The position numbers were made by a program, and so were the translations under genes. The notes beneath the pieces are model-generated. The model did no database searches. It was not told where the DNA came from and saw nothing but the letters and a program-made list of their open reading frames with translations. A stretch of DNA of 64,000 bases from positions 60,884,001 through 60,948,000 of the forward strand of contig NC_086374.1 in NCBI RefSeq assembly GCF_036588685.1, given 5' to 3'. Below are positions 18,476 to 58,200 of this stretch, piece after piece (position 1 is the stretch's first letter; every line of letters begins with the position of its first letter). The stretch is from Mytilus trossulus (Eukaryota).

Positions 18476-21400
18476 TCACCGTTCAAAGTTTTGAAATTCT
18501 CCTGGCATATTACTTAGTTCTTTAATGGTTGGGAATTTTTTTGTATCCCTAATTCTTTTAGTCACCGTTATATCTGGTTGAGGTCTAGGGGTCTTAGAAG
18601 ATCTGTGTTTCAAATCAACTGAAAACACTGATAAATTTGCTTCAGACATAACCATATCAATACTAGAAGGTCTCTGAATCGATAACGGTGTTGAAGTTCT
18701 AGGATCATAACTAAAAGAATTGTTAAAACTATTGTCATGAGCTGCTGTTTTAATTGTTCCATTTGTGATTTTATTTTTGCGCATGCTCATTGTTCGACTT
18801 TTTGCTTGAGGGTCATGAACATATTGACTCATTCTACTTTTAGGTGGAAAAATTGATGCTGCCTGACTCATTTTACTGGCTGCTGCTTCTCTATTATATG
18901 CATCTTTATTCGCAGCATCCTTAGCCTTTAACACTGCTATAACACGCAACTCCCTTTCTAAGTTAGTTTTCACTCTGTCGATAACGAGCGCCTGGTTGCG
19001 TTTACGTTCACTGTCTTCACGCATCTGGGTAGCAACTCGACTTTTCATTGTGTCTATTGTCGCTATGGGTGGTTGCGGTTTTGTTACTAATTTAAGCTGT
19101 CCTTCTGGTTCTTGAAACTCAGAGTTTTGTTTCCATTGTTGTAGTTCCATGCTCTGTGGTTGCCCATTCCTGATTGGTTTTACTACAAGTTTAGGCTCTG
19201 TTATTATTTCCTTGTTTACCATGGTATTGGTGTCTGACAAAGTAAACACAGTATGGGCTCCTCTAGGAAGTGTTTTTGGAACTATAAAATCAAAAAATCA
19301 AAAACGATTATATTAATTTATTAATTGGACTTATTCTCTATCTCTAATCTAAGTGGAAAATTTCTAAACATTTTTCATTTGATTAAGCACATACATATAC
19401 ATGTTTTGATTCACTATAATATATAATGTGTTGTACGTATTGACGTTAATGCCTCAACAGCTTTGGTTAAAAATCCTTTTTGAAATATTCATGAAATAGG
19501 AATGAAGATGTTACATCATTCAAGTTGTATAGTTGTATAGTTATTTCTCAAACTGTTTGAAATTTTATTAATTTGCACTAATATTGTGTTAATTTATCTC
19601 TCTTTGGATTGAACACATTTGGGAAAAAGATCTGTTCCATGGCAGTAAATCAGATGCATGAATAAATTTTAAATAAGATAACATTCTAACTAAATGATAA
19701 TAAACTATCGGTTTTGTCATTGGTTTAATTAATATTTTGATTTGAGCGTCACTGATGAGTCTTATGTAGACGAAACGCGCGTCTGGCGTACTAAATTATA
19801 ATCCTGGTACCTTTGATAACTTTTAATACTATTTTGATATAAAATGATTAGATATCATATTGTATTAATCTAATCTAAGATCGCACCAAATTCTGATTTA
19901 AAATACTGTTATCTTTGGTTCGTATGGTCTTCAGAAATATGCGTTTTCAGATATTGTTCTCTTAATTTTTTATTATCTCAGACTTTTTCTATTCCTTCTT
20001 TGCATTAGCCCTTTTACATTTTGACTAACAACAACACATGAATTAATGCTGTCAGTAGTCATCGTGTTGAAATTCCTACTAATTACTTGAAACAATATGT
20101 GACATGGTTAATTGCTAACTCTGATTACATAAATACTGTAGATTTTTTAAAATTAAATATAACAGGGGATTCAATTGGCGTTAGATGCATGCATGACACG
20201 AGCCGATAACCTGTTCTTTTGATTTCATGCGATTCTTCGTTTTATTACGTTAATTATTATCTATTTGATTAACGCATTAATAAGATTTGAACATCGATAA
20301 ACTACTGTTATCTCTAATATATCTAGTGCAATTTACAATTTGCTGTTTGACAAGAGCTTTGAAATTAGCCTATACTTACTGATAATGATTTTCTTTGTGT
20401 GCTTTTTAATATAACTTCTATAACAGCAAATACCAATTACTAGAGCCAGAAATATGATTAACATTAGACTGAAAACTATTGCAAAGATTGCTGCAATTGA
20501 CAGCGGATCATCTGGCGGGGTTACTGGTGCTGAAAGTAGAGATATCAAAATGATGTTCGGGCTGATTCGTCGTTTAACATTCTAAAGGATTGCGGATAAT
20601 TGCTATGTTTGCATACAAATGTGAAAACAAAGTTATGCAATTTGATGACTAGGCTAAACATTGTATCCACAACATATGTTGTACGCTTTTGAAAATATTT
20701 AAAGAAATAACATTGATGTTAAAAAAAATTACATGAATATTGTTTATCAAAGATACCAGACAACATACGACCCATCAATGAGAATCAAAACAGTTCGAGG
20801 TCCAAGTCGAAAACGAAGTTAAAGAGCATAAACCGAAAAGTAAAAACATTTGTAATCAAAGTTAAGAAAAGGTATAGTAATTTTAGAAATAATTATTTTA
20901 AACATAACATTTGGTTTACAAGTTTAATGCAGCATTCAGATATGAACCAATGATCTCGCTAGTTGTCAGTTAAACTAGTATTTTAAATGGTAAGGTAGAA
21001 CTAGAGCGAATTCAAGATATGGACTGCTGTGTCACTGATTTCGACCCATAGCAATTACTAGTAATTGACAACAATATAACTCTTGAGAAAATTTCCGTTG
21101 ATGTGACCAGTTGAGGCCTGTTGTATACAAATTATGTTTGTAAAGTATTCAATCAGGTGCACTGATAGTTTAAAGCAAGTTAATACTCACCACAGGATGC
21201 TGAAAATAGTGTATAATTAGAATTAAAAAGGTATTAATTAAAATGATTAATGAAATGTTTTTTTCTAAACACAAGCAAAACTTGCATCACCATAACCAAG
21301 TACAACATGTATATCATTACGCTTCATGATAGTTTGAACGTTGATTTCCCTTAAAATATAAGCTCGATTGCAAGTAGTCCTGTGATCTTTTCAGAAAAAG

Positions 21401-24400
21401 ACATTTCTAATGTAAATTATGTTCGTGATAAACACTTTATGGCAAGTTTTAAATTTATATGGTTTATGACAGCAATAATGTTAAAATGAACATATCAATT
21501 TCATCAGAGCACAATGGTGGTATTACTACTCATGAAATCTATCGCTAGTACCCTGAATTAAGGCTATGCATTTGCGTGTGCTCTTAAAAAAACAGAAAAC
21601 ACATCCAAAAAGTATTTCGGTATGACACTTAAAAATCATCCTTCATTATAAACCTAAACCTTCGAATTGTTTTGAAAAGTCCTAATATAATTACTGATTA
21701 CTCTGGTAAATGTGTTCATAGGAAGATACCGAAGGGAGACCAACAAAAACATGATAAAAAGAATAATCCAAGAAAAACCAGGGCGATCTTAGGTACATCA
21801 GGAGGACAAACAGATCCTGCTTCTCTATTGGCATTATAGTGTAAGTCTCATTTGGGGATGTTTTAATCTTGGACAATAGGAACGGGATTTAGCTACCACA
21901 ATCAGAACATATATAAAGGCAACATTTGTACATATCTTGGTCATTGAGGCACGGGTATTCCATATTAATTAACATAATCATTATGGCATTCTTTACACTT
22001 TAGATGGGATTGCTTCAACTTTACCACTAAGAGCCTTTGGTTCAATAGCTTCCTTGACAGCAGCAACCAGCTATCAAGGAAAACCAGGAAGGAAAACTAA
22101 AGCTTTGGTGTATCGTGTCAACTGGGAGATGATATTTACTCCCTACACAGGCGCTGATGAAATGTCACTGAAAAGCCTCTGTATAAAGCACAAGTATATA
22201 AATTAAATGAACCGGTCGACATGAAGACGTGACCAGTTGGTACCTACATACATGCCGATTGTCTGTTGAAAACAGGTCATAAAAAACGTAACAAAGGAGT
22301 TGTCAATTAAAAAAAAATAGCATCTTGTTGATATCATTTGTTTTAAATGTAATTAATTATCTGTTTAATGTGTTTGAGCTTTTGATTCTACCATTTGATT
22401 AGGGACTTTTTTTCAAATCAGTATTTTTATGATTTTTCTTTTTATACCAACTTACTGACAGTTGTGAGTTGAAGAAGAGCACCATCTGTAGGAAGAACCG
22501 TCGGACTGGAACCTGATGAACATTTATTTGGACTTTGACTGACCATTGTAATATTGGTATCAAATTCCACCGTCTAAAAATAATAAGAAAAAAATTATTA
22601 GGAATCATATTCTAAGTTTTACATTCATGACACAAAATCAGTATGTGCACAGCAAAAAAACATTGAAAAATAAAAAAAAGTTTTGCTCTATCAAAATCCT
22701 ATTTAGGCCTTAAACACGGAGTATCTCACTGTAAGTGTAAGAAGGCTCTTAGCACAGTTTTATATTTCATTTGGGGGGTGGGGTGAGGGATTTGTAAATA
22801 TTCGAACTTTGATAGGCAATTTTAAATTTCTATTAGGCATTCAACAACCAATACTACAAAATGAAGTACTCTGTGTTTATCATTACCAGTAAATGCGTAT
22901 ATGTAGGTGCGCATGCGAATGATTGTGTATGAACACTCTATTCACTCCATGTAAAGCAATAATATGATAGCAAACAGAATAAAAAAAAATGTCTGATTTA
23001 CTCACAAAACACGTAAATCGCTTTGTAGACGCTCCATTTACAGTAGTATCAAAGTTGTAAACACCTACATAGTAAACACTGGTACTTGTTGTGTCTTGGA
23101 ATGATGTGATACAACCTAATGAACCAGACGCTGGAATGAATAATGATAATTAATTTATTTATAAAAATGTGTGATGAATTTGAATGTTCGTTGTGCTTTT
23201 TTGCTGCTTGGTTTGTTTTGTTTTGTTTTGGTAATTAAGAGTTATCAAATTTTTGCTCAAAAATACAAGAAATAACGTGAGTAAATTCTTGGTAGTGTAG
23301 TAGAGAAGATATTAGCTCAACATAAAATTTCGTAAATATGTCATCAGCTATAAAATTATCTATTAGTGAAAAGAATGAATAACTTTGCTTCATTAAAAGA
23401 GACTAATTTGGTAAGTTACATGTGTGATTTCATAGAGATACTTGTATACCTTCATGTATTTCATACGGATTTGGATCATAGTTTAATAAAGTCAGAGGGG
23501 GGGGGGGCGATAAATGGCTGAATCGTGTTAAGAGAAAGTCTTATATTTGCACGTAAAAGACACCCTTGTAGATTGCGAAAAAGAGCAGGCTAATGCCCCT
23601 AAAAGGCATCACTCGCACCCGCAAAGTGGAAAGAGACCAATATAAGTTGCAATAACTTGTTTCCCAATCTACTATTTATAAATATGTTTAAATAAAAGCT
23701 GAGTTTATGAAAATCTGTGAATCTTTATTTTGAACCATATAAAAAGAGTATTGTTTTCTACTAGGACAATTTTAGACTTTCACTGATAAACTACTCGATC
23801 ATAAATTGCAACTACTAGTACTCTTATGGTAAACTAAAGAGATTTTTTTAAATCATTTTATTTGCTACATTTGTGCGTCAATAAAATAAATACTGGCATT
23901 GTCATACGTTTGCCTCAAATATTCACTGGCGCGGAATGACCAAATGTTGATTCGCATATTGAGTGAAGCATGCATATCAGATGACGCTTATCCTGTCAAA
24001 TCATCAAAAGGTGCCCTTTTTTGGAGTTAATGCGATTTCCTAAGCCTTTATATCCCCTTTAGTGTGTATGCTCTAAACGAATTTATGAGATTAAAACATC
24101 AGTAAACAACTGTTCATTTTATGAATAAACACAATGTGTCTTTTGAACACACGTATTCTTCATACTTCGTCTGATTGCTGCTATGCTGTTTCCTTCGTAA
24201 AAATATTTCAAAAATATCGTAAAATGCATTATACTTTAAAATTAGTCTAAATTCAAACTAATAGAAATTTACAAAAAGGATCTGGTGAACAAAAATACAA
24301 AGAAATCACGGGAAGAAAATATCGTAAAATGCATTATACTTTAAAATTAGTCTAAATTCAAACTAATAGAAATTTACAAAAAGGATCTGGTGAACAAAAA

Positions 24401-27400
24401 TACAAAGAAATCACGGGAAGAAAAACAGACTATACTATATAAAAAATTATTAAAAAAAAACCCAAAAAAACATTATTTAAAAAAAAAAAAAAAAAACATT
24501 ATTTAAAAAAAAAGAACCTAGAAACATGACCCCCACTAAAAAAATAAATAATGTAGACGGAAAGCACAAAAGATATTGATCGTGACTTTTAATGACAAAT
24601 TTTCGATGGGTCAGGCCATACTGGTACTCTCCAATATCTTATGTTGGTTGCATGAAATGACGAAGAAACTATATTTGGTTATCAGATGTGAGTGTATATA
24701 ATGTATAAGGTGAAAAACAGAGTTTCAAGTTCCTTACACGATCTCATCAATCTGAAGAGACAAAAAGGAAGATATTCGATCAGTTATATATTGTAAGACA
24801 TTGTTTTAATTAAAACCTACTAAACATTGTGTTGCATATGAAAAATACAGCTACTTTATACATTTACCTGAATATCCAACGAACTGACTTCCACAGGCAG
24901 TATTATTTAGAGTAATAATAGTTGTATTAGAACATCCTTCCCAGAAAGCAGATACCCCACATTGCGATGAATCGGTTCCAAAGTTCATGGTATAAGTAAA
25001 ATCACCAAGCAAAGGTACAGGAACAGCGCTTAATCCTTCCTTTGCAGAAGCTGTATAATATATAAATAAATAGTACTTCAGGCATACGCACACATTTTAA
25101 CAATTAAAGTATTATTTTATCATATATTTAAAAAAATCATTTTGATATGACGCTTTTGTAGTTCCTATTGACTATTACTGTAGTAGTCTGCTGCTAGGAT
25201 TTTCTCCGTCGTTGAAACAACGTACTGATAATTTTAATAATTGAATATTAATCATAGCTTAATGTTGACCTTAGATGGATTTCGCTCTTCTTTTATGTCT
25301 CTTCCGGTCTTATAGACCTTCAAATGTTTGAGTAGCTATGCATGTTTGGCTTTAAATGTTTTGGGCGTGAAGTTCTGTATAAAGGTAAATACAAAAAAAT
25401 CGCTTTTGAACAAAATTGTATGTTTTTTTCAAATTGAAAGAAATCATTAGTGCATAAGATTGAGAGAGTTTCGTGTCCTTTTTTGTGATTTTGTTCTAAA
25501 TGGAAATGCCGTTCTTAGTCGGGTTTTCAGTCGAAATGATCCAGAAAACCTAGAAATATACTGATTCAGTATGATGAACGTTCGACATAGTATTCTAGTC
25601 TTATTTGTTCAATGCAATTGGAAATATTTAGCATTGATTATCGTTATGCGTATGAAATATTTGGAAAAGAATAGTCTTGTTATGTTTATATGAGTTAAGT
25701 TCTAAACAACTCACCAGGATTTACAAGCATATGGAATTCACCGACGCCTGGTGAAGTATTACACACATCTGCTTCTGTTACAGTTGTAACCGTTGTTGCA
25801 ACGGGGACTACATCGCCAAAATTTAAATTGTCTTGATCACCTGAAATGATATGTCAACGACTTAATCTATATGTATTTTTAACGAACATGTCTTTTATCT
25901 ATTTAAAAATACACGAACATTTTTCAAAGATAACAGTCTTATAATTGATGAGCCAGATGCGCGTTAAGTATATGTCAGACCCGTTAGTAGCACATGAATC
26001 AATACAGAAGAAAGGCCGAATCAAACGCGAAGTTGAAGATCATTAAAAGCAGATACATGTAAATCCCAAAACGGTGACAAAATAGGAGTGTATTCTTATA
26101 TCAATTGGAAGCTTTTAAGAACAAAAATCACTTACTTGATCTGAGGTAATAATAAAATGATGAAGTTGTTAATGATTTTATTTCGAAGCATATCCATACA
26201 TTAACAGTGAAACCACCAAGAATACCTAGCGTGACAGCCTCAACGCTTCTGAAAAATAAAATAAATAGCAGGCATTTATAGGATGCATATCTCTTTGATT
26301 TCAGGTACAGATCCACAAACGTAACGTCTTCAAATAGCTAAAATCATATACGACGTCGGCTTTCCACCCCAGAAAACGTAAGCGTAACAAACACACTGGA
26401 CACGTAGTTTATCACATAATTTTAAAAATAAACGTTCAGCAGGTTTAATTTTTTCCGAACAACAAAGTACAGCAAATGCACATTCTGAAAATCTAAGAAA
26501 ATACATGCTAAGAGCGGTGTAAAAGAAATAAAAAGCGACTATGTCGTAGACCCTTTTCATAAAATAGCGTTAAAACGTCAATTCTTTAAACTGTAACATA
26601 ATCGCTGGACATTTAAAAAAATCAGATGTTCGGCCTTGACTATCGAATCATTCATATTTTGAAGAGTTTTCAAAACCTCTTGTTATGCACATTTGGAATA
26701 TCGAGTCATTTCGAAATAATTTTTTTTAGCAAGTACATATTTATTCACCGATTCTTCCATTTGCTAATATTAATCCTTCCAAATTACTACTTCTTACATA
26801 TAACTAACTAAATTCCAAAGTCAATCACAATGGCCGATTTTGATTTTTTTTAGATGAGGATCGTATGATGTCATAGTCCGAATACGGAAAAAAATATTGT
26901 ATGAAAATGCAGGAATATACGTTGAATTTGTACAAAATTCAGGTCAAAAACTATACTTTATTATTATTTAATGTTACAAGTTACACATATTTTTGCCGTT
27001 TTTTTCATGTTCGTTTCATTCTTTAGAGATTTAATTTTAATAACCTTATTAATTATGTGGATTTGTATAGCTGGCTCTAAACATTTTATCATAAAAAAAA
27101 CTTCCTATTTAAAATATTTGTTTAACACGTTTGTATAAAGCTACTTTTAAAAGCGTATTTTACAGTGGCCGTCAACTCTGTGCACGTCGTCAATATACAT
27201 TCATTGCATTGTCGAAGACCGTGTTTTGGTATCTTAATGTCATTTCTATGTTTGATGAGATTTTCCTTTGCCCTGTATTCCTCATCGTCCTATATCCATA
27301 TTCTTCAAAATAAAATTCATTTGTAACAAACAAACAAAAATAGAATCGTACAAATATGCCATTAAAATGATAAAATATATTATTAACTCATCAAAGATTC

Positions 27401-28669
27401 CAGCCTTATAATGTATGACAGGCGATACATCTACAAAAGACTCAATAAAGAAGCGGAATTTCAAGGATGAGAGAAATATTAAATAAACTTCAATGAGATT
27501 TAGAAGGCTAATAGCACTCCCCCCCCAAAAAAAACCCCAACTAAATTAAAAAAAGCACAATACATCAAAATCCAAAACACAAAACAAGACAAAAATAAAA
27601 ATAATAGCAAACCATTAAACATCAAAAACAAAACATAACAAAAACCACACTATGTACATACATGCAAAGTAACTGTAAGACATTACTGTTCATACATGTA
27701 CAAACACTATGACCTTGTTATATATATATATATACTTACTTTGATACATACATATCTCCATTATTTAGTTGACAAGTAAAGTTTGTATTTGTGAAACCAG
27801 TAACGAATTTTTTCGTCTCCATGTTCATAGAAGAATCTGTAAAGGCGATAGTACCATAAACGCTGTCGTACCATGTTCCTCGTAAGTCACTTGGGTAAGT
27901 ACATAGTCCACCTAAAAACATATAGAAAGGTAAAATAACGTGTCTTTCGCCAAGTAATCAACTTCCAATGAAATGTTTGACAATTGGTTATCTGAACTAG
28001 CTAGGAGTTTAATGAGAGGAAAACATGTCAAAGATTTTTCAATTTGATGTTAAAAGTAGATTTTTATATAGATTTAAGTGGCATGTTTATGACTTTCGAA
28101 CAGTGGTATACTACTGTTGACTTAATGTGTACTGTTGTTTATTGCGGTATGTTATATTTGTTTTTCGTTAGTCCTTAGGTCATTAATAAGACCGTTGTTT
28201 CTATTGTTTTGTTCATGTCGAGTCCTTTTTAAAGCTGCTTATACGGTATGAGTGTTGCTCAATGTTAACGTCTTTTCGGTGACTTATAGTTGCTAACCTC
28301 AACGTAATTTTTGTCTCTGATTCAAATTTGTTTTATTTGAAATCAATCAACATCACCTTATTTAAAATATTTATCAATTTTGAATACTGTCCATTCATAA
28401 CAGAAAACATAACTTTCATTGTTTTGTGAGTCGTTAAGGGAGTTTTTTGCTTTTATTAGTGATGTTACATAAGAAGTTATGGTTTTTCTGGTACCAGCGT
28501 CAATCTTGTGATAATTTAATTTGATGCGACATGTCTTTTAAGTTGCAACAGCAAACGAATTATCTGAAACAGCTTATATTTATTATGAAACAAAACATTC
28601 AAAATACTTACAACTTTGATGTATTAACAGGAACAATCCATAAATCAGTCTTACGTCAAGTACCACCAT
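18476..28669 (-). CDS. Gene A: uncharacterised single-pass type-I membrane protein with a Cys-rich ectodomain (619 aa, 10 exons)
   Basis: Exons 28669-28612, 27911-27740, 26248-26136, 25840-25715, 25050-24868, 23130-23006, 22573-22456, 21199-21191, 20529-20380, 19281-18476. All introns are GT-AG, with phases 1,2,1,1,1,0,1,1,1, giving 1860 nt open. Signal peptide MVVLDVRLIYGLFLLIHQSCG; ectodomain LCTYPSDLRGTWYD...RFTCF; TM IAAIFAIVFSLMLIIFLALVIGICCY followed by basic residues. Confidence 0.9.
19744..19790 (+). ncRNA. Solo minimal hammerhead ribozyme in the last intron of gene A (antisense to A)
   Basis: GAGCGTCA CTGATGA GTCT TATGT AGAC GAAA C GCGC GTC^TGGCGTA. Confidence 0.85.
21191..21199 (-). 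CDS. 9-nt microexon of gene A (T-S-C)
   Basis: TATTTTCAG|CATCCTGTG|GTGAGT, phase 1-1, with a CTAAT branch-like motif upstream. Confidence 0.85.
23505..23692 (+). mobile_element. 5'-truncated copy of the tRNA-SINE
   Basis: Similar to the reverse complement of 340-530. Confidence 0.75.
24211..24424. repeat. Perfect 105-bp tandem duplication (intronic)
   Basis: AAAATATCGTAAAATGC...CACGGGAAG starts at 24211 and again at 24316. Confidence 0.9.
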
Positions 28670-32900: not shown

Positions 32901-35900
32901 GTTTTCCTTTAGGATAATACGGAATTTCGGGTCTCCAATGCTCTTTAACTTTTTACTTTTTTGGCTCTATAAATATTTTCATCTGAGCGTCACTGATGAG
33001 TCTTATGTAGACGAAACGCGCGTCTGGCATACTAAATTATAATCCTGGTACCGTTAATAACTGATTAAAAAAGTTGTTGAAAAAAATGAGGTCACGTTTG
33101 TTATGGTAAATTTTCTTCTTTAACATTCAAGAGTCATGTTATAGATAATGCATACTCTAAGGGTATTCTAAGTAAATTATAGTTCGCATGTTTATCAAGG
33201 AATATATTACATCACACTGGTCATTATTTTATGCCTTGGACCATATATCATTGAAACATGGTATCGTCCGGGTAGATTCTTCGAAAGAATGACCTATCGT
33301 TCTAAATGAAAATTACTCCATATAGGTATATAAGTTCTTTGATAGTTTTGAGAATGACAATTTATGTAGTTTCCGTGTAATTATTTATGAACCGTTTGAC
33401 GAATATTGTTCAAGTTAAATTTTACTTGTAACTTGTGACAAAATCGAGGTAAAGAACGACATTGAAATTTTTCATTTTTGCGGTTCACGATTTATTGCCC
33501 ATGATAGATTATAAAATATGCACAGAAAATGGCAGTTCACACATGCATGAAAGCGTCTAAAATACAAAAACACCGATTTTATGTTAATTTCCAAGCTTTT
33601 TTTTGGTAAAATTTGCTTTTGATATACATAAAAATAAAATTGAGAATGGAATCTAGCAGTTTAGCAGATAATACCATTCATGAGAAGACTTTTTATATAT
33701 TGAGTTGTGTAAAATCTTAGTAATAATGATGGAACATTTGGTGATACAACAATACCATTCATCTATTCGCCTGTAAATATCAGTTGAGGTACGTGAACGA
33801 CCCGTTACAAGTACTTCTAGCGTAGTGCACCATTATAACAGGAACAGCTCTTCATACTATTTCGACGAATAGAACATTAGGGAAAACGGTACTATTTATT
33901 CTGCCATAGGCGACAATATTAACATTTTCTGAATTTACCACTTTTTATGATAAAAACCTGGATAAAACAGTTATATCTGAATTTACCACTTTTTATGATA
34001 AAAACCTTGGATAAAACAGTTATATGTGGTGTTAGTACTTTATTATTCTGTTTTAAAACTTAAAGCCAAATAGTAATATGATCAACTTCCAACAGAGCTT
34101 GTTCATGTTATTCATGCCCACCGTCATTTTGCACCAAATTTATCCAATTTTTTCGAATAATTCTCTAGAAAATATTTCAATAGGTTTCAAAATTTATATT
34201 GTAGATATACACACTGCAGTTATTCATAGATAAATAAAAAAATATATTGTACCCTTACATCCAATCACAGCGCTACTAATTTGACTTCCTTCGCTTGCCT
34301 TGGGTACACAAAAGGCCAACCTAATGCTGGGAAAATGTAATAGTACCGTTTTCCCATTAGACCGATGGGACAGTTAAATAAGACGTGATGCATAAGTATA
34401 AAAGGATAATCTTCAATATCTGAATAAAAGAAGCAAAAGAATAAACTTAATAATTTAGTTGCAACAACTTTGTGCAGTAATTTCCTCATACACGTTTTAT
34501 CTAATTGACATTTAAAATATCTTTTTTTTATTCAAAGGTTCAGAGGAAAGTGCTTTAACTGATTGTCCAGATCCACTTTACAGAAATTTTACCTACATTT
34601 TCAACACTGGTGGAACAGATATATGTTCTTCGCCGAACAACGGATTTGTTTCAGTTTGTCCTAGCAGACAAGAGTTGAACTTTGACTACGACAAATGTGC
34701 CAATAAAATAGCGTATACGAGTATGTGTTAGAATTATAATATAGATATAAACAAAATAAAATAATGAGATGTGGGTTAAACGTCGATGAGGCAACAACAC
34801 AACACATTGAAAAAATCAATTCATCTCGCGTTATGTCAGGCGCTTGCATAAATATTTAGCTACATTTGTGATATTTACAAAACTTAGCTTTCTCTGGTTC
34901 TTATCTGTTGACAAACTAATTAAATGCAATAAGAAATATGTAAAAATTTAGTTTTAATTGCACCCAATGAAGGATGGATATTTACGGCGATGCCATTTTT
35001 TTTTAATGTTACATCTGTTATGAATGAATGTTTTGGGCTTTGAAACGAATTTGGATCCAGTATTGTCTTGATCCCTTCTTTTGCTTGATAAAATAATTAT
35101 ATATCAACCAATAAAAAAAAGATGGTGCTCACTTTGATGTAAAAAAGGGTAAAATCAAGATATCAAGACAACTTCAATATCTTTACCTTTATCGACAATG
35201 ACATAGATCACAGGATAAGCTACAAAACGTCCAATGTACATGACAATTAATGTGAAAAACATAAAATATGGAGACAAACAAATACATTATTTAGATCAAC
35301 AAATGAAAGCGATATAAAACATAAACGTCTAGGACAAGATCTTGCATAGTTGAATCATGTTTTCATAATAAATCTTCTTATCTTTATGCAGCATTTGGAA
35401 GACTTGGTTGTGTTGCGTCTATCGTTGACGATTCATCAGGAACATACTATGCGTCTTTGTATAATTTTGACGATACAGTTAATCGACTGTCAACATTCAG
35501 ATTCACTTGTGTGGTAAGCTCATCAATAGCCACACTACAGTTAGTGTGTATATAATGTGAACTGAGTTAACATATTAAGGGCAGCAGTGAATAAAAAAAA
35601 AAAGAAGATATTATAGTACATTAATAAGACAAAAAAATCCAACAATAACAACAAACAGCACAAACCTTTAAGATTAAATTCTCCAGTTAAAGAAAAATTT
35701 GAACGCTTGGTGATCATTTTCTAACACAAAATAATGAAATTTGCAAATATTGAAAAATATCACAAAACTTCTTTTAATTTTTATTTAGTATTCCAACAAT
35801 AATTTTAGCAGTTATTCATATTCTGACTATGATGCATTAGATGAACAAAATCTTAACCCCACTAAAATGATAGTAAATTTGTTGTTCTATTTTTAGGCAG

Positions 35901-38900
35901 TCCAAAATGCAGCCTCGGGAGATATTCAGGTGACCTATACACAGGGTGGTCAATGTGTTGCTGATCAGACATACAACACCAAACCCGCATCTGGAGGACT
36001 AATTACACTGACCCCTAATGGTATTTAATGAATTAAAATGTGTGATATACATATATTTATTAAAAATCTTTGTTCTGGTATGATCATGTATACACAGCGA
36101 ATTCTTGTTACAATAAATGTAATTATCATTCTCTTTTTCCAAAATGACTTTCTTCGGGGCGGTATGAGATTGCTTAAATATTTAGTTATATAGATGGGTT
36201 GCTTTAAAATGTCATGGGTTAAGAAAACGATAGAACGTATTTTTGTTCGTCATACTAATTCATATTTAAAACAATTTCAGGTACATGTGGTATGTATGGA
36301 TAAAGTTAATCAAATTGGCTTGAGAACCATTGCAGCCATAAACACTTAAAAAAGGCAACTACACCAACATAATTCATGATACATAAACATATTCATAATA
36401 GGAGACAATAACGAAAAGAAGAAATGGAATTATATAAGAAACCTTCAAATAATTAATTATCAATCGTTCCTGTGATTTTGGCAAAATGAAACAGTTTATT
36501 TTTTGATTTAGAGACTATTTTTTTTACAGAGAATATAACAAATACGCCATCAACACGACACACGCACTAATTTAAAAAAAAATGATAGTACATCCTATTA
36601 CACTGACCCCTAATGGTCTTTATCTTTATCTTTGTTTTTTGTGCATGGTTGTGGATTATCCTCTTTATATACTTGTATTCACAATCGATGTATTCAACTT
36701 AATGTATAGTAAAGCTTACACTAGAAAAGTAATACACTCTGCAACTGGCGTAAGTTGTAAACTATTCTTCCAAAATCAGGAAAAAGCTTTGCTAACGGAA
36801 CTTTGTAATTACCAACCTTTGTTTCCATTTTATTTGTTTTCTATAACCAGCGTAGAATTAACATAACCGCCACATGTTATCTGAGAAGAGGATAACTATC
36901 GCAATATATATATTGTCTCAGATGTTGTTATATTTTGAATCTAAGATAACGAGGCAAGTTTTCTACACCGATTGCCATTATCAAAAAAAAACAACACTCG
37001 ATCAATATTTTCTCCAACTAAAAACAAAGGTTTAAGCATTAATCTCTTTTTGAAATCACACTTTTTGATTTAAAGTTTATTCATTCAACAGAATATCATT
37101 ACGAAACATATCACTGTTTCACTTTTATGAATCCAACCTCTTATATAATGTATAAACCAAAGAAAAGTGCTGTTCTAGAACTTAAATGATTGACAATATA
37201 ACTATACACCACATAAAAATATGATACAATGTATTTGTTTAAGTAAAAATGTTCACCACAGAAATTTCTTTTCATTTGTCAATATTCTTTAAATCATTTG
37301 GACAGAAATAACAACCACATCAACATCAACGACAACTACAACAACAACAACGACTACTCCGACAACAACACCGGAAGTAACTACGATAGAAACTACGACT
37401 AACACAACAGAGTCAGCTACTATTGATTCCAACGATAGTAATATATGGCCCATTGTTGGCGCCGTATTAGGTGGTTTACTAGTTATTTCATTATTGTTAC
37501 TTATTCTGTATTGTCTTCTGCGGAAAAAGAAAGTGCCTGATGCTAAGGATGACTTGGTAAAAGTTGAAGATGGTTTGGGTAAGTGATAAAATCGTGTCTA
37601 GAACTATTTCCGTAAAATTATAAACAGGTACGTTTTTTTCTCTTGCATGTCGCTAAAAAATTGGAGTTTAAATATTTGAACATGCGTTTAACATGCGTTA
37701 ACATGAATTCGAACGTACCAACTTTACTATAGGTATGTTAGTGTTATAATAAATTGATTTGATTAGACAAAATCGCATCATGCATTTTGTATTATGAAAC
37801 TTACATATTTGTTTTTATTTGGAGACTTTTGTGTGAAAAGCAGATCATTTAGGTTATTCATATCTATTTTTGAAGAGAAGATGTTTTTTTTTATCGGAAT
37901 TGTTGATTACATATCGTGGTCGTTGGAAATGTAATGATAGTTATAAGGAATTTTCTACTGAAAAGAAAAATTGCGGAATATAAAGATAATTAATTAAAAC
38001 TTGAAACTTGAAAAACATAAAACATACATAATCCTGTAAAACTTTTAGAAGAGTGGGCTGGAACCATACCTTTTTCATAACACTTAGATAGAATCGCAGA
38101 TATTTGTGTTATCAAAATCAAACCAACCATTTGATGACCAAGAACAAGATTAAAAAACACAGAAAAACTTTTGATTTTGATTTTTTAATTTTACATATAT
38201 CACTATATCATTTAACTAAGTTTAATTTATTTAGTTTTCAAATATTTCAGACGATGATCCGAGCGATGATGAATCAATACCATCTATTGAATATCCAGAG
38301 ACATGGGACACGCCCACAAAAGATCCCATTGGACCTTTAAGGCGATACGTCACAACAGGTAACACTAGGTTCCATTACATCTTCAAACTGTTTACTCATT
38401 ATTTCATTTAAGATCGTCACTATGACATTTTAATTGAGCACGTATAGTATGGACAACAATAAAAGGCAAATAAAGGCTACAGTAGTACACCAGTTTCAAA
38501 AGTCGTAAATCGATTGAGAGAAAAAAAATCCGGGTTACAAACCAAAACCGACGGAAACACATCAAGTATAAAAGAAAACAAAAGTATAACAGGAACATCG
38601 AAGTGCAACAAAAACAAACGCCAACACACAAACAAACAAAAAACGAACTATCTGATAATAAGTGCCATATGCCTGACCTGGTACAGGACATTTTAAGAAA
38701 CAAAATGATGGGTTGAACCTGGTTTAAAAGCATAGTTGTATTATCTAAATCAAGGACGTTTATCACATCATATATTTGCACAATTGTCTTCCTACTACTC
38801 TGCGTGCGTCTCCTTGACTGAATCGGATAAAATAAAACACAGTTTCTAAAACTGGTTTATTTTTGTATGGAGATATTAGCTATTTGTCATAGTCACGTTA

Positions 38901-44954: not shown

Positions 44955-45370
44955 AACCTTCTATGACAAAAGGCTGTGTTCTATCTGAAAGAAAGCCTTT
45001 CATTCAAGCAATCTGGTTTCCTTTGTGTCTATACTGATCAGGTTTATAAATAAAGAGACTTTGGCTTACTTTGCCGAATGCATTCGAGAAATCTACGATG
45101 AGGCAGTTTGTTTTTTGTCCATTGTCAATGTTCTTCGTGCTGTCCTCGATGAACTCCATTAGTTATACCTCGCATGCCAATTGTTTTCTAAATCCATGCT
45201 GCATTTGTAGAGGATGTTATTCTTATCTCCATGGTTCATTATGTGGCTGGCAACTACATGCTTCAGCATTTTGCAGGAGATGGAGGTAATATGTACATGT
45301 CTATAATTAATAGCTTTGAAATGTTTGCCTTTCTTTGAAACTAGGCATACACTTGCTGTTTTCCAGTGAC
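44955..45370 (-). mobile_element. Highly decayed LINE reverse-transcriptase fragment
   Basis: Frameshifted minus-strand motifs ITSISCKMLKHVVASHIMNH, QHGFRKQLACE, DFSNAFGKV and FLSDRTQ. Confidence 0.7.
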
Positions 45371-52200: not shown

Positions 52201-55200
52201 TAAAAGAATTGCTACACAACTCTTTATAACAATATCAAAAGATAACATTTTTATTTACCTTTAAAAACAAAAGGGCATGGACGTTTTTACCTAGGAATAT
52301 TAATGACACGGACATGACTTCCTAGGAAAATTAGTCTGTGGACATACATTTTATAAAAAATATAAATACAAAACTCATAAGTTTCCATTGTTTTAACGTA
52401 AATGATTTCATTCATTAATATTTTTCCTATAAAGAGGACATGGACGTGTTTACCTAGGAATATTAATGACATGGACTAGAATACCTAGGAAAATTAGTCA
52501 GAGGACATAAATTACTTACATCGGACAAAAAAATACAAGTAAATTTTGTAACCATGGACTTTTTCTACTAGTTATATGTGTCCGCCCAGACATATTTTAC
52601 CAGGACAAATTTATCTCTTACAAAGGTACTGATTTCAACACGGGATCTTGGCTCACACCGAACAACAAGCTATAAAGGGCCCCTAGATATTAAGTGTAAC
52701 ACCATTTAAACGGAAAAACCAACGGTATAATCTATAAAAAAAACCGAGAAACGAGAAACATATATAAATTACATACTACTGTACTGAAAACTAATGTACA
52801 TCAGATTCCTGATTTAGGACAAATGCAAACATTTGCAGCGGGATTAAACATTTTAATGGTACCAAACCTTCTCCCTTTTACTGAGACAATTATAGTATAA
52901 CATCACAACATAGAAAAACACACGATAAAATATCAATTGAAAGGCTTAACTCAATTCAAAAACGTAAATTAACACTCTATGAACGATTTAATTTGAGATG
53001 TTTGCTTGATGTATACACAACATTCCCTGTTACTATGCAGTTTCTCGTTTCACTAGATACTATCAGGGACAACAATCTATAAAATCTTAAATTACGTTTC
53101 AGTACCTACATTTGTTAAACTTACTTTCGTGAAATTTTCACGCCTTTCTCAAAAAATGAAAAGAAAAATAAACAAGCAAAAACTCAAACAAAAACAACAA
53201 CAAAAAACACTAAAAGAACCTGAAAAAAAACCAACAACAATAAAACAAAAAACTTCACTACTGTATTCATGCAATAATGTAACTGCCAAAAGTATAATCA
53301 TTTCTTATCAAAAAGATGTTTTCAATGAAAGTTAAGTAATGTTCATATATATTTTGTAGCTGAAGGAAGAATTGGTTGTGTTGCCACTATAGATGATGGC
53401 TCAGGCACTCTATACACATCGCTGTATAATTATGATGCCAGTGTAAATGGGTTAACTACTTTTAGATTTACATGCGCTGTACGTAAGATCATAGATTAAA
53501 CACGACACGTTTCAATTTAATGTACATTTCCTGAAATAAAAATAAATGTGCAAAATTCAAAAATAAAGAAATAGAAAGAAATCTTCTGCATGACCAAAGA
53601 ACTGTAATGTGTATGCATAAATGAATAGGAACTGATTTCTCTTTCAGTAACACTTGTCAAATTGAGACCACCTTCGGTTTATTTTGTGGAGTATTTAATT
53701 TTATATGTAGAATTTTATGGACTATTTATGGTAGTTTTTTCGTCGTTTTAGAAAAGGATAGAAAGATGTAACATGTACTGAAATAATAAATTAATTTGAA
53801 AGATATTTGCTATTGTCAATTACCTCCAGCACATCTAAATATTAATGTAAGTAATATTTTTCTACTGAAGGCTGTTCAGGGTGTGACGTCAGGAGATGTA
53901 CAAGTTAGTTATGCGAAGAAACGATGTGATGCCGATCAGCCTTACAGCTCTAGACCTCCTGATGGTGCTCTACTGACACTCACGCCTAACGGTAAGGTCA
54001 GCAACTCTTATCCGATATGAAAATCACAGAAGTTGTTAATTGAGAGGTCTAGATCGCTAGAATTCTGTATGAAAAAAGAAGACTTGGTACGATTTCGAAT
54101 CAGACAACTCTCCACCAAATGACATAGAAGTAAACAATTAAAGGTCATCGTACGGCCTTCAACAATGATTTGACCCCATACCGCAATAAAGGTATGGGTC
54201 TGACAAAAGTATAACAATTTAAACGAGAAAACTAACGACGTGATTTATGTACAAAACAATGTACGATAACAATTTTTTTTAAATGAAACAACAAACGACA
54301 ACCACAGTCTCTATCATAATAACTTGTGACATGCACATCTAGAATTACACTAGGTTACTGTCTCTAAATCCTCAATATAACTGGGACAGTGGTGTGAATG
54401 TTCATAAGTACATAATAGCAATACTTAGTTTGTTGGTGCATAGTAATATCCGAAATACAAGTAAACATGCTCCTGTGAAGTTGACTTAAAGACACAAGGA
54501 ACCGCAGTGCATTGTGGACTACTTCGCGTTAATAAAGCCTACGTAGGATTACATAATAGCACATAGAATATGGTTCAAAAGAGTCATTTTGTGTTGAGTA
54601 TATGTCGGAAACTCATCTACGTAATATAAAACATAAAATATATTTATCAAATTCTTCAACTGATATGCGCAGATTTAAAGTACATTTTTCCTCAGTTTCC
54701 ACATTTGAGTTTGTTTTTGTCATGTCAAAGTAGTATTAAAAGAGCAGATTTTATTATATGAGATAGACCGGTGCATTAATATCAAGTGAAATGAAAACGC
54801 ATTGACCATTCCAGTAAAACTCATTTGAACCCTTAAAACCTAGTAAACATATTTTAATGTATAGAATTATTTATTTGATACTGAATGATCTATAAATGTT
54901 CGTATCATGTAAAGATACGTCTTTTCAAAATCGGTGCTCTTTCAAGAAACACGGAGAAGAATACGGCATCGAAATCTTCATTGATATCAAATATTACAGC
55001 CAGCGTTTTGTATGAAAATGACATATGGTTTATCTGCGATGAGTAATTGACTTTTTGGTTATATCTGTTTTAAAATGATTACATTTGAATTAGTATTCAT
55101 TATTCTGAATAATTCGTAGGGCTTTTTTTTTCAAATTTTGAGAATGGATTTACGCTTAAACAATGATAGAGCAATGTTCAGGGCGTGTGATAACACAATA

Positions 55201-58200
55201 ATTTCTATAAAGGGCAGACAACATTTAAGCTTTACTTTTTTAGGGCATAATTCCACCTTGCCTAACGGCTCTGGAAATTTGTACCTCTCAACCGGCAAAT
55301 ACCCCTTGTAAGCATGATATATTTGTATAAAATCTTTTTGTGGACTTTCATTAACCTTTGGAATAACAGATGTAGGTTTCAAAATATAAAATCTATGTTG
55401 TGTCAAAATGAAAAAAAAATTTGTTAATTTAAAAATGGAAGTTGTTTTGTGATTTCCAATTAAAAACTCCCCAACAGAGATAAACTGACGTACACGTAAA
55501 TAAACAAGTCACTGCATGGCCTTCAATAATTAGCAAAATCTATACCACACAGAGAGTTATAGAAGGTCCCGAAATGTTAAATGAAACGCAATTCAAATCA
55601 GAAAACTAATGGCCTGATTTATGATGATAAACAGCAACAAAAACAACCAGTGAATTGTCGACTGATTAATTTATAACTTTTTATTTCAAAAGAGGTTCAC
55701 ATTTGAATTAAATTTTGATAAATTACGATTAAACATCTATAAAAACAGACGAAAGTGAAACACAAGTTTGGCTTTTCCTTATCTTCATATATTTGGCTTC
55801 CTTTCATTTTTAGCTTTGCCAGCAATCAATGATTTAAAAAACATTTTTTTTTCAACTTTGGCCTCACGAAGATATAGAAACGCCAGCAGGTCAGACACAA
55901 ATAAACATGTATTTGACATTTGTATACATAAAAAATGACCTGAATAATGTCACATATCAATCATTACTTAACACTTCAAACAATTATATATCTCTGTATG
56001 GATATGTTAAAATGGAGATACTTATTATAAGGAGGTGAAAACTTGACGCAACAAATGAACAAAACAAAACAAAACAAAAGATCGTTGTGACTTAGAGTTC
56101 TTTTAACGACACCCAAAAATGTTAATACTATATCTATGATAGAAAAATTTCTGTTACAGGTACTTGTGGTGAGTAAATTAAAAAAAAAAATCTTACTACC
56201 TTTTTATGTTAAGAAAACTGTTACTTTTTTGTAATTTATCAGAAATGGTTGTTTCTATTATTCCATATTATCAACATTACTACAGCGTAAAAATATTACT
56301 AACAAATATGCTAACAGTCAGTTTCAAAATCTAAAAAAGTGAAGATCTGCTTTTTAAAAAAACAATATTTAAGCCAAGTTGTGAAGCAACAAAGCCGACA
56401 TAAGATATGTTAAATGCAGTTCGACCGAACAATAGTACATATAACATAGTAACAAACCCGACATAAGATATGTTAAATGCAGTTCGACCGAACAATAGTA
56501 CATATACATAGTAACAAATCCGACATAAGATATGTTAAATGCAGTTCGACCGAACAATAGTACATATACATAGTAACAAATCCGACATAAGATATGTTAA
56601 ATGCAGTTCGACCAAACAATAGTACATATTACATAGATATGTTAAATGTAGTTCGACCGAACACTAGTACATATTACATAGATATGTTAAATGTAGTTCG
56701 ACCGAACAATAGTACATATTAAATAGATATGTTAAATGCAGTTCGACCGAACAATAGTACATTTACATAGTAACAAACCCGACATAAGATATGTTAAATG
56801 CAGTTCGACCAAACAATAGTACATATACATAGTAACAAATCCGACATTAGATATGTTAAATGCAGTTCGACCAAACAATAGTACATATAACATAGATATG
56901 TTAAATGCAGTTCGACCGAACAATAGTACATAAACATAGTAACAAACCCGACATAAGATATGTTAAATGCAGTTCGACCAAACAATAGTACATATTACAT
57001 AGATATGTTAAACGTAGTTCGACCGAACAATATTACATATTACATAGATATGTTAAATGCAGTTCGACCGAACAATAGTACATATTACATAGATATGTTA
57101 AATGTAGTTCGACCGAACAATAGTACATATTACATAGATATGTTAAATGCAGTTCGACCGAACAATGGTACATATTACATAGATATGTTAAATGCAGTTC
57201 GACCGAACAATAGTACATATTACATAGATATGTTAAATGTAGTTCGACCGAACAATAGTACATATTACATAGATATGTTAAATGTAGTTCGACTGAACAA
57301 TAGTACATATTACATAGATATGTTAAATGCAGTTCGACCGAACAATAGTACATATTACATAGTAACAAACCCGACATAAGATATGTTAAATGCAGTTCGA
57401 CCGAACAATAGTACATATACATAGTAACAAACCCGATATAAGATATGTTAAATGCAGTTCGACCAAACAATAGTACATATTACATAGATATGTTAAATGT
57501 AGTTCGACCGAACAATAGTACATATTACATAGATATGTTAAATGCAGTTCGACCGAACAATAGTACATATTACATAGATATGTTAAATGCAGTTCGACCG
57601 AACAATAGTACATATTACAAAGATATGTTAAATGTAGTTCGACCGAACAATAGTACATATTACATAGATATGTTAAATGCAGTTCGACCGAACAATAGTA
57701 CATATTACATAGATATGTTAAATGCAGTTCGACCAAACAATAGTACATATTACATAGATATGTTAAATGCAGTTATACCGAACAATTATCTTACATATTA
57801 CATAGATATGTTAAATGCAGTTCGACCGAACAATAGTACATATTACATAGATATGTTAAATATAGTTCGACCGAACAATAGTACATATTACATAGATATG
57901 TTAAATGCAGTTCGACCGAACAATAGTACATATTACATAGATATGTTAAATGCAGTTCGACCGAACAATAGTACATATTACATAGATATGTTAAATGCAG
58001 TTCGACCGAACACTAGTACATATTACATAGATATGTTAAATGCAGTTCGACCGAACAATAGTACATATTACATAGATATGTTAAATGTAGTTCGACCGAA
58101 CAATAGTACATATTACATCGATATGTTAGTTGCAGTTCAACCGAACAATAGTACATATTTCATAGATTTGTTAAATGCAGTTATACCGAACAATTATCTT

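What the first reader, a model, noticed from the sequence alone, without database searches (positions are those of the whole stretch)
21191..56168. Conserved 9-nt microexon supplying the last ectodomain cysteine in all three paralogues
Seen: CATCCTGTG (21199-21191, T-S-C), GTACATGTG (36281-36289, G-T-C) and GTACTTGTG (56160-56168, G-T-C). Each has a canonical AG/GT, is phase 1-1, and sits at the same position between the last ectodomain exon and the stalk/TM exon, although the surrounding introns are unrelated. Skipping keeps the frame and removes one Cys. In B and C it is the 12th Cys, so skipping would leave one unpaired. I saw no UGC motif next to the acceptors (the hallmark of Srrm3/4 eMIC-regulated neural microexons), so the exon may be constitutive. 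Inference: a possible splice-controlled disulfide or dimerisation switch. Automated annotation is likely to miss it.
Basis: partly seen in the sequence, partly recalled or inferred. Interest (0 to 1): 0.8.

Follow-up and report, generated by a model that had tools for sequence, protein, structure and literature searches.

The report
Conserved 9-nt cysteine microexon in mussels
Three neighbouring mussel genes for a membrane protein each carry a real 9-base exon that supplies the last cysteine of the folded outer domain; it appears to be always included rather than a switch, and public gene models routinely miss it or break at it.

Summary
All three 9-mers sit at the stated coordinates with AG/GT flanks, in phase 1-1, between the last ectodomain exon and the stalk/TM exon. 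The introns around them are otherwise unrelated. The shared signature occurs 4 times in the window against 0.27 expected by chance.

For gene B, spliced transcript contigs from two mussel species contain exactly the 9 nt (GTACATGTG; GTACCTGTG, a synonymous change). No skipping contig was listed.

The genes belong to a mollusc DUF7044/DUF7042 family with a 12-Cys framework, and the microexon supplies Cys 12. In an AlphaFold model of an oyster member, Cys 12 caps the last strand of a lipocalin-like barrel. Three more paralogues in this genome (very probably Mytilus trossulus) carry the same kind of microexon. One has it fused to exon 6, most simply by intron loss. A first-stage note (s1-823789) reports the same on other DNA of this genome.

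The "switch" reading is not supported. All nine Pecten RefSeq isoforms and eight oyster sequences keep the tripeptide.

The "annotation misses it" reading is supported. Mytilus models skip it, read into the intron, or start at the TM exon.

Verdict: a constitutive, conserved, domain-coding microexon, which is a new member of a known kind. Genes A and C lack direct RNA evidence.

The parts
21191..21199 (-). Gene A microexon CATCCTGTG, phase 1-1, encoding (A)CA-TCC-TGT-G = T-S-C
   Evidence: It is the only Cys-coding AG-N9-GT with a GTGAGT donor in the 1926-nt E6->TM intron. There is no RNA evidence for it here.
36281..36289 (+). Gene B microexon GTACATGTG, phase 1-1, encoding (G)GT-ACA-TGT-G = G-T-C
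   Evidence: contig X1 record 2 and contig X6 record 11 join 36023->37305 with CATGT / CCTGT between. This equals E6 (to 36020) + GTACATGTG / GTACCTGTG + TM exon (from 37306).
56160..56168 (+). Gene C microexon GTACTTGTG, phase 1-1, encoding G-T-C
   Evidence: It is 8/9 identical to B inside a 17-nt conserved island within unrelated introns. There is no RNA evidence for it here.
22456..22573 (-). Gene A exon 6 (last long ectodomain exon, carries Cys 11), with phase-1 donor A|GTAAGT
   Evidence: Boundaries are inferred from paralogue alignment and splice sites.
35897..36020 (+). Gene B exon 6 (carries Cys 11), with phase-1 donor G|GTATTT
   Evidence: joints 35512/3|35896/7 and the junction into the microexon.
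53871..53991 (+). Gene C exon 6 (carries Cys 11), with phase-1 donor G|GTAAGG
   Evidence: Boundaries are inferred.
20380..20529 (-). Gene A stalk/TM exon, phase-1 acceptor; the 3' end is inferred
37306..37578 (+). Gene B Thr-rich stalk + TM exon, phase 1 to 1
   Evidence: pieces 37305/6-37577, joint to 38250/1.
59404..59697 (+). Gene C Thr/Glu-rich stalk + TM exon, phase 1 to 1
   Evidence: It is matched by orthologue models P0142/P0143.
34538..34720 (+). Gene B exon 4, start of the DUF7042 barrel (Cys 5-8). The paralogous exons are C about 51020-51196 and A about 24862-25036.

Best explanation
Each of the three paralogues encodes a type-I membrane protein. The parts in order are a signal peptide, two disulfide-rich beta-barrel domains (DUF7044, then DUF7042), a Thr-rich stalk, a TM helix and a long disordered tail.

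The 9-nt exon is a constitutive, ancient, phase 1-1 microexon. It encodes the last three residues (x-T/S-C) of the second barrel. Its Cys is number 12 of the family's 12-Cys framework and sits directly after the final beta-strand, at the boundary between barrel and stalk. It is presumably locked in a disulfide; the partner is not determined.

The microexon's donor (TGTG|GT) corresponds to the original donor of exon 6. An extra phase-1 intron separates the last 9 nt from the rest of exon 6. This arrangement predates the A/B/C triplication, and one paralogue type has lost the intron.

Inclusion appears to be the default. It probably relies on ordinary strong core signals (YAG acceptors and GTRAGT-like donors) and not on a tissue-specific activator.

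The main practical consequence is that gene-prediction pipelines fail at this junction.

Shown: the sequence features, transcript inclusion in gene B, family-wide conservation of the Cys, and the failure of gene models. Inferred: inclusion in A and C, constitutive status, disulfide bonding, and intron loss versus gain.
For: - Sites, phases and uniqueness.
- Enrichment of the signature, 4 observed against 0.27 expected.
- A conserved island inside unrelated introns.
- Spliced RNA contigs from two organisms contain the 9 nt in gene B, with one synonymous difference (ACA->ACC). No direct E6->TM joint is listed.
- 124 relatives, all molluscs where named. The large majority of full-length ones carry a Cys 3-6 residues after the L.LT strand, just before the stalk.
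- Models that lack Cys 12 always keep Cys 11 and the other framework Cys, and the hole begins exactly at the exon 6 boundary. Real loss looks different: Cys 5 and Cys 9 are lost together.
- All nine Pecten isoforms and eight C. gigas sequences keep the tripeptide.
- Three more paralogues in the same genome have a well-formed 9-nt Cys exon after a phase-1 exon-6 donor: L014 ATACATGTC, L018 CAACGTGTC, L022 GTAGCTGTC.
- The P0104-type gene has the Cys fused to exon 6, ending TGTG|gtagga. It is most similar to the microexon-bearing L018 and L022.
- AlphaFold model of oyster P0088: ectodomain pLDDT about 95, last strand 288-297, Cys 12 at 298, and confidence collapses after residue 300. Barrel alignments end at 295-300.
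- No TGC within 70 nt of any acceptor.
Against: -
- That evidence consists of assembled contigs, which show presence and drop minor isoforms, so skipping at low level or in unsampled tissues is not excluded.
- Two M. galloprovincialis models join E6 directly to the TM exon. I read these as pipeline errors, but they could reflect real skipped transcripts.
- Gene A lacks framework Cys 5, so it has 11 Cys with the exon. The parity argument therefore does not apply to A.
- The disulfide partner of Cys 12 was not determined, because no model coordinates were available.
- Exon structure in other species could not be read. Conservation of the microexon outside Mytilus rests on 3-residue holes and read-through in Potamilus, Sinanodonta and Pinctada models.
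Confidence: 0.78

Rival explanations
1. Regulated cassette microexon. Tissue-, stage- or stress-dependent skipping removes Cys 12. That would leave a free thiol in B and C, changing folding, covalent dimerisation or redox behaviour of the ectodomain.
For: Skipping preserves the frame. B and C would go from 12 to 11 Cys. Two M. galloprovincialis models encode exactly the skipped form, TPN|ETTTTT. Contigs cannot exclude minor isoforms. The literature says UGC is frequent but not strictly required for SRRM3/4-dependent exons.
Against: Only the inclusion form is listed in the two runs that bridge the junction. None of nine Pecten RefSeq isoforms skips it, although they vary in the stalk and tail, and none of eight oyster sequences does either. 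No UGC lies between branch point and AG in any of six microexons. The Cys is the end of the last barrel strand, where loss looks destabilising rather than modulatory. One paralogue has fused it into exon 6 and so made it unskippable. The models with the hole come from pipelines that also make gross errors at this junction.
Confidence: 0.08
2. Only gene B uses the exon. The candidates in A and/or C are relics or chance look-alikes, and those genes splice differently or are decaying.
For: No RNA was examined for A or C. Gene A is the most divergent: it encodes T-S-C, lacks Cys 5, and its 3' part lies in a 98%-identical tandem duplication. All public C-orthologue models lack the tripeptide.
Against: The same phase, the same position, strong acceptors and GTGAGT donors, and a unique Cys-coding candidate in each intron. 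The chance expectation is 0.27 per window. C differs from the RNA-verified B exon at 1 of 9 nt inside an otherwise unalignable intron. Three further paralogues show the same design. Without it, the C ectodomain would have an odd Cys count.
Confidence: 0.07
3. The arrangement is a recent intron gain in one Mytilus subfamily, not an ancient feature. The fused form (P0104 type) would then be ancestral.
For: The microexon's donor equals the exon-6 donor of the fused gene. Exon structure outside this genome was not readable. No rooted tree was built.
Against: Six microexon-bearing paralogues span the deepest splits sampled, and the fused gene is closest to two of them. Potamilus and Sinanodonta (unionid) and Pinctada models show a 3-residue hole, a model end or read-through at exactly this boundary. 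A separate first-stage note reports two more such paralogues.
Confidence: 0.12

Closest known systems
Constitutive, conserved, misannotated small microexons of plants: the 9-nt phase-1 exons in AP2-domain and invertase (GH32) genes (Yu et al. 2022, PMC8831610)
   Same: The exon is 9 nt and phase 1, and it encodes residues inside a conserved folded domain. It is usually included, is conserved across paralogues and species, and is pervasively missing from genome annotations, which yields wrong protein models. Gene-structure variants that have lost a flanking intron coexist with it.
   Different: This case is in an animal (mollusc), in a different protein family (a DUF7042 barrel), and the residue supplied is a framework cysteine at a domain boundary rather than a catalytic or DNA-binding motif. 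Inclusion levels were not quantified here.
SRRM3/4 (eMIC)-dependent neural and endocrine microexons of bilaterians
   Same: A very short, frame-preserving (3n) exon with strong conservation of the exon and its immediate flanks, in a surface or membrane protein.
   Different: No UGC lies between branch point and AG in any of six copies, whereas 74-79% of SRRM3/4-dependent microexons have one. No alternative isoform was seen. The exon lies in the core of a fold rather than in a surface loop. Tissue specificity was not tested.
Pfam DUF7044 / DUF7042 domain family (uncharacterised animal proteins)
   Same: Exons 1 and 4 hit PF23071 and PF23069. The gene C exon 4 passes the cut-off in the genome search. 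Orthologue models score 53.8 bits. The 12-Cys framework is shared.
   Different: Pfam's DUF7042 alignments stop at profile positions 95-114 of 123, 15-20 residues before Cys 12. The model may therefore not reach the final Cys. No publication mentions the family.
Lipocalin-like eight-stranded beta-barrels (e.g. Tp0751 pallilysin 5jk2, lipocalin-like 4qrl); double-barrel membrane-anchored APCDD1 (8e0r)
   Same: The DUF7042 half of the model aligns as a barrel: Z 9.0, rmsd 3.0, 97 residues to 5jk2; Z 6.5, 116 residues to APCDD1. Every alignment ends at residues 295-300, next to Cys 12. APCDD1 likewise has two barrels ahead of a TM anchor (my own knowledge, a lead only).
   Different: The Z values are in the range the tool calls a common arrangement. 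Foldseek finds nothing at E<=0.001. No sequence kinship is shown, and no function can be transferred.

Membership tests
Internal microexon (an exon of <=15 nt present in mature mRNA) | Canonical AG acceptor and GT donor flanking a <=15-nt segment inside an intron of a coding gene, in the frame of the neighbouring exons | tested here: met
   for A, B and C.
Internal microexon (an exon of <=15 nt present in mature mRNA) | The segment is found between the flanking exons in transcripts | tested here: met
   Gene B only: contigs X1 record 2 and X6 record 11.
Conserved constitutive domain-coding microexon (sensu Yu et al. 2022) | Conserved across paralogues and species at the same position and phase, and coding for part of a conserved domain | tested here: met
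   Six paralogues in this genome. The orthologue in a second species carries a synonymous change. Cys 12 is conserved across bivalves and gastropods and lies at the end of the barrel.
Conserved constitutive domain-coding microexon (sensu Yu et al. 2022) | Included in the major or only isoform | tested here: inconclusive
   Only inclusion is seen in contigs and in all annotated isoforms of relatives. No read-level PSI was obtained.
SRRM3/4 (eMIC)-regulated microexon | A UGC motif between the branch point and the AG of the upstream intron | tested here: not met
   No TGC within 70 nt upstream in any of six microexons. The criterion is taken from one search, which also says the motif is not strictly necessary.
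SRRM3/4 (eMIC)-regulated microexon | Neural- or endocrine-restricted inclusion that depends on the regulator | not testable with these tools
   The tissue of the runs is not given, and there is no perturbation data.
Alternatively spliced cassette exon (switch) | Both inclusion and skipping isoforms exist in RNA | tested here: inconclusive
   No skipping joint is listed, and there is none among 9 Pecten isoforms and 8 oyster sequences. Contigs drop rare variants. The M. galloprovincialis models with the skipped join have unknown support.
Pfam DUF7042 (PF23069) / DUF7044 (PF23071) proteins | A match to the family HMM at or above the curated cut-off | tested here: met
   Taken exon by exon, B exon 4 scores 24.7 bits (cut-off 27) and exon 1 scores 18.3 bits to DUF7044. 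Gene C exon 4 scores 30.1 bits, over the cut-off (L003). The C orthologue model P0001 scores 53.8 bits. The DUF7044 match stays below the cut-off. The joined protein was deliberately not searched.
Pfam DUF7042 (PF23069) / DUF7044 (PF23071) proteins | The conserved 12-Cys ectodomain framework seen in the mollusc members | tested here: met
   B and C have 12 with the microexon. A lacks Cys 5, as do several other members.

The most novel reading that the evidence does not exclude
The microexon is kept as a separate exon in many paralogues because it is occasionally skipped on purpose, in particular tissues, stages or stresses. Skipping would release Cys 11 or another partner as a free thiol, converting a monomeric barrel receptor into a disulfide-linked dimer or a misfolded, retained form. 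That would be a splice-controlled redox or dimerisation switch across a whole mollusc receptor family.
Probability: 0.07. Interest if true: 0.6.

Novelty: new member of a known kind. Interest (0 to 1): 0.35.

Why it matters
Conserved microexons of 15 nt or less that code for parts of folded domains and defeat annotation pipelines are documented in plants and are known in animals mainly as regulated neural exons. This is a clean mollusc example in an uncharacterised family, DUF7044/DUF7042.

The practical value is the larger part. In at least three Mytilus species, the public models of these genes are cut in two at this junction, lose the TM exon, or lack a framework cysteine. As a result, a family of single-pass receptors with a double-barrel ectodomain and a long tail is currently annotated as unrelated secreted fragments and as tail-only proteins (one is named 'rho GTPase-activating protein gacO-like'). 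Recognising the 9-nt exon would restore the full architecture for many paralogues.

It also offers a small, datable case of microexon persistence and of intron loss within one gene family.

Tried and rejected
- **Other species' exon structure:** I did not try it by another route.
- **Gene C transcript ORFs:** searching with the gene C TM exon alone returned only an unspliced genomic ORF, P0145, which says nothing about splicing.
- **Foldseek:** the PDB search gave no match at E<=0.001. The wider VIA search gave only middling barrel matches.
- **Disulfide partner:** model coordinates are not stored, so Cys-Cys distances and the partner of Cys 12 could not be measured. Co-absence analysis identifies Cys 5-Cys 9 as a likely pair but gives nothing for Cys 12, because Cys 11 is never absent.
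- **C1 paralogue (L010/L011):** it is a divergent subfamily and its exon 6 could not be located.
- **Intronless C8 paralogue (L012):** it keeps the last Cys but is too distant to count as a retrocopy of these genes.
- **L022 correction:** I first read L022 as 'Cys fused to exon 6'. Codon-level reading showed that this was intron read-through after a phase-1 donor A|GTAAGT, and a proper microexon lies downstream.
- **Fourth pattern match:** the match at 43711 lies outside the homologous introns and is taken as chance.
- **Literature:** no paper mentions DUF7042, and none links microexons with this mollusc family.
- **Joined model:** All searches used single exons or unmodified database proteins.
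Full report
**What is at the coordinates**

- A: ttttcag|CATCCTGTG|gtgagt, minus strand, 21199-21191.
- B: atttcag|GTACATGTG|gtatgt, 36281-36289.
- C: gttacag|GTACTTGTG|gtgagt, 56160-56168.

The window is AT-rich (about 31% G+C) and has no N runs.

**The genes**

I compared stop-to-stop reading-frame segments between the three regions. This gives a colinear set of paralogous exons, listed here as B / C / A:

| Exon | B | C | A |
|---|---|---|---|
| E1 | 30535-30855 | 47634-47864 | 27739-27957 |
| E2 | 31815-31973 | 48262-48408 | 26131-26337 |
| E3 | 32603-32845 | 49426-49647 | not found |
| E4 | 34516-34728 | 50929-51201 | 24854-25096 |
| E5 | 35325-35552 | 53329-53496 | 22886-23149 |
| E6 | 35897-36025 | 53790-54017 | 22445-22573 |
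| stalk/TM | 37293-37583 | 59382-59747 | 20333-20548 |

After these come a short acidic exon and a long tail exon. Scanned exon by exon, E1 resembles DUF7044 and E4 resembles DUF7042. The TM exon looks like a mucin-type stalk plus a membrane anchor.

**Phases**

E6 ends in phase 1 at the same homologous residue in all three genes...TPN+G|gt in B and C, and ...TTV+A|gt in A. The TM exon starts in phase 1. The 9-nt exon is therefore phase 1-1 and reads T-S-C (A) or G-T-C (B, C). Skipping it would keep the frame.

**More than chance**

- Each E6->TM intron (1926, 1285 and 5412 nt) contains only 6, 3 and 6 AG-N9-GT candidates. Exactly one per intron has a Cys codon and a good donor.
- The generic signature AGN5TGYNGTRNGT occurs four times in the 64-kb window on both strands, against 0.27 expected. 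No shuffle of 100 reached four. Three of the four are the claimed sites, each in the homologous intron and in sense orientation.
- The introns themselves do not align. The only shared island between B and C is the 17-nt TTNCAGGTACNTGTGGT.

**Transcripts, gene B**

Seventeen public runs hold 5-14% of gene B's words. I laid the contigs of four runs from four studies on 34400-40300.
- The contigs are spliced at GT..AG joints: 34720|35392, 35513|35897, 37578|38251 and 38358|38995. They are therefore RNA-derived.
- Two contigs bridge the junction of interest: X1 record 2 (organism A, nearly identical to the window) and X6 record 11 (organism B, diverged).
- The tool reports the joint as 36023->37305 with five letters between, CATGT in X1 and CCTGT in X6.
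- The intron begins GTA and ends with G, so the aligner absorbed the first three letters and the last letter of the microexon.
- Written out, the transcripts read E6 (to 36020) + GTACATGTG + TM exon (from 37306) in X1, and GTACCTGTG in X6. The difference is ACA->ACC, Thr to Thr.
- No direct E6->TM joint is listed.
- Contigs show presence and drop rare variants, so this proves inclusion in the main form but not the absence of skipping.

**The family**

A profile of the three E4 exons (one exon, no joining) found 124 relatives. All those with a source name are molluscs:
- Bivalves: Mytilus, Crassostrea/Magallana, Saccostrea, Ostrea, Pecten, Mizuhopecten, Pinctada, Sinanodonta, Potamilus, Mactra, Solemya.
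- Gastropods: Haliotis, Lottia, Nucella.

Aligned, the full-length members share a 12-Cys framework. Cys 12 lies three to six residues after an L.LT strand and directly before the stalk. Examples are TPYITCPF (oyster), TPYEPCPF (scallop), SNQTCVPE (abalone) and TPN-GTC-E (genes B and C).

Models that lack Cys 12 always retain Cys 11 and the other framework Cys. Their sequence breaks exactly two residues after the strand (TPY|, AY|, QY|, PN|), which is the E6/microexon boundary. Alternatively they read on into what looks like intron. Real evolutionary loss looks different: Cys 5 and Cys 9 disappear together in three proteins. I therefore read the holes as annotation errors.

Gene A and a few other members lack Cys 5 only.

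**Is it a switch?**

- Pecten maximus LOC117328786 has nine RefSeq isoforms that differ in the stalk and tail. All nine keep EPC.
- Crassostrea gigas LOC105344726 and six independent transcript-assembly ORFs all keep ITC.
- None of six Mytilus microexons has a TGC within 70 nt upstream of the acceptor. A UGC between branch point and AG is present in 74-79% of SRRM3/4-dependent microexons, though it is not strictly required.
- One paralogue has the three codons fused into exon 6, where they cannot be skipped.

Together with the contig evidence, this favours constitutive inclusion.

**Annotation**

| Model | Gene and species | What the model does |
|---|---|---|
| P0142, P0144 | C orthologue, M. 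galloprovincialis | Join TPN directly to ETTTTT |
| P0001 | C orthologue, M. coruscus | Also drops the TM exon |
| P0143 | C orthologue, M. californianus RefSeq | Starts in the intron just upstream of the TM exon |
| P0152, P0153 | B orthologue, M. galloprovincialis and M. californianus RefSeq | Start at a Met inside the TM exon and lack the whole ectodomain; P0153 is named 'rho GTPase-activating protein gacO-like' |
| P0002 | A-type, M. galloprovincialis | Reads through into the intron |

**Other paralogues in the same genome**

The contig lengths recorded for the M. trossulus RefSeq protein P0104 (4,334,515 and 81,773,519) equal those of contigs C26 and C14 of the window's assembly. The genome is therefore very probably Mytilus trossulus.

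A DUF7042 search of it found at least eight further loci. Three have a phase-1 exon-6 donor followed, in the next intron, by a single well-formed 9-nt Cys exon:

| Locus | Exon 6 end | Microexon |
|---|---|---|
| L014 | ...TAT T\|GTGAGT | ttacag\|ATACATGTC\|gtaagt |
| L018 | ...ACA T\|GTAAGT | ttttcag\|CAACGTGTC\|gtaagt |
| L022 | ...AAG A\|GTAAGT | ttttcag\|GTAGCTGTC\|gtaagt |

The P0104-type gene (L013/L016) instead has exon 6 running on through ...GAA TCT ATT TGT G|gtagga. The microexon's donor is therefore the old exon-6 donor, and the extra intron lies 9 nt upstream of it.

Compared exon by exon, the fused gene is closest to L018 and L022, which carry the microexon. Intron loss in that gene is thus the simplest history. 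No rooted tree was built, so intron gain is not excluded.

An intronless 698-aa distant paralogue on C8 keeps all eight DUF7042 cysteines, including the last.

A first-stage note on another piece of this genome (s1-823789) reports a 9-nt microexon supplying the tenth ectodomain Cys in two paralogues. That fits the 10-Cys subfamily, which lacks Cys 5 and Cys 9. I did not check whether those are loci I examined.

**Structure**

An AlphaFold2 model of oyster P0088, built with the family alignment, is confident (mean pLDDT 84.8; ectodomain blocks 92-98). It shows two beta-rich domains, a stalk and a TM helix.
- The last strand is residues 288-297 and Cys 12 is residue 298.
- The pLDDT block is 86 for residues 291-300 and 49 for 301-310.
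- Foldseek finds nothing significant in the PDB.
- The exhaustive aligner places residues about 168-300 on eight-stranded lipocalin-like barrels. The best match is 5jk2: Z 9.0, rmsd 3.0, 97 residues. APCDD1 gives Z 6.5. All alignments end at residues 295-300. These Z values show a common arrangement and do not show kinship.

The microexon therefore encodes the very end of the folded barrel and not the linker.

**Comparison with what is known**

The nearest described kind is the class of small (15 nt or less), conserved, mostly included microexons that code for parts of domains and are pervasively misannotated. It was documented in plants, where the commonest are also 9-nt phase-1 exons (AP2 domain, invertase) and where variants that have lost a flanking intron coexist (PMC8831610).

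It differs from the SRRM3/4 neural programme by lacking the UGC signature and any sign of alternative use. No paper mentions DUF7042 or this exon.

**Verdict**

- The exon is real in B and very probably real in A and C.
- It is best explained as a constitutive, ancient microexon that completes the DUF7042 barrel.
- The switch idea is not supported but is not excluded.
- The annotation problem is real and affects several species.
- It is a new member of a known kind, of moderate to low general interest and of practical value for mollusc gene models.

**Limits**

Noticed in passing
window 8592-13965 and about 15001-20395: A tandem duplication of about 6.4 kb at 98.4% identity. It contains gene A's 257-aa tail exon twice, with identical ORFs at 12046-12819 and 18476-19249. 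Its right edge (20395 / 13965) falls within the last about 16 nt of gene A's TM exon. It is either a very recent duplication of the gene's 3' part or an assembly artefact.
   Followed up: partly
window 56388-58899: A large minisatellite in the intron just downstream of gene C's microexon: about 51 copies of a 45-nt unit, with 62- and 107-nt variants. It creates long spurious ORFs on both strands.
   Followed up: partly
window 34536-40236 (gene B exons): Between the window and organism B's transcripts, the ectodomain and stalk exons differ by about 7-12% (for example 16 of 128 nt plus a 3-nt deletion in exon 6). The tail exon differs by only about 1% (13 of 1114). The ectodomain evolves much faster than the cytoplasmic tail.
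   Followed up: no
window 38340-38733: An intronic stretch of gene B with very high contig depth (up to about 2700) and many loose ends in all four runs. It is probably an expressed interspersed repeat.
   Followed up: no
window 40236 onward; ORFs 40935-41090 and 42416-42769: Gene B's long 'tail' exon is not terminal. Transcript contigs splice out at 40236, and the M. galloprovincialis model P0144 matches further exons near 40935-41090 and 42416-42769. That model is a chimera of gene B's tail and gene C's ectodomain.
   Followed up: partly
L012 (G000:C8:32926000-32934000, minus strand): An intronless 698-aa ORF encoding a distant multi-domain DUF7044/DUF7042 paralogue with a hydrophobic C-terminus. 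It keeps all eight DUF7042 cysteines.
   Followed up: partly
L013 vs L016 and L020 vs L022 (G000 contigs C26 and C14): Contig C26 (4.3 Mb) carries near-identical copies of two family genes that also lie on C14. It may be an alternative haplotype or a recent segmental duplication. RefSeq annotates both (LOC134700185 and LOC134695799).
   Followed up: no
window 43711-43727: A fourth match to the microexon signature (AGAAGCATGTTGTAGGT), outside the homologous introns, in the region 3' of gene B. It is taken as chance.
   Followed up: no
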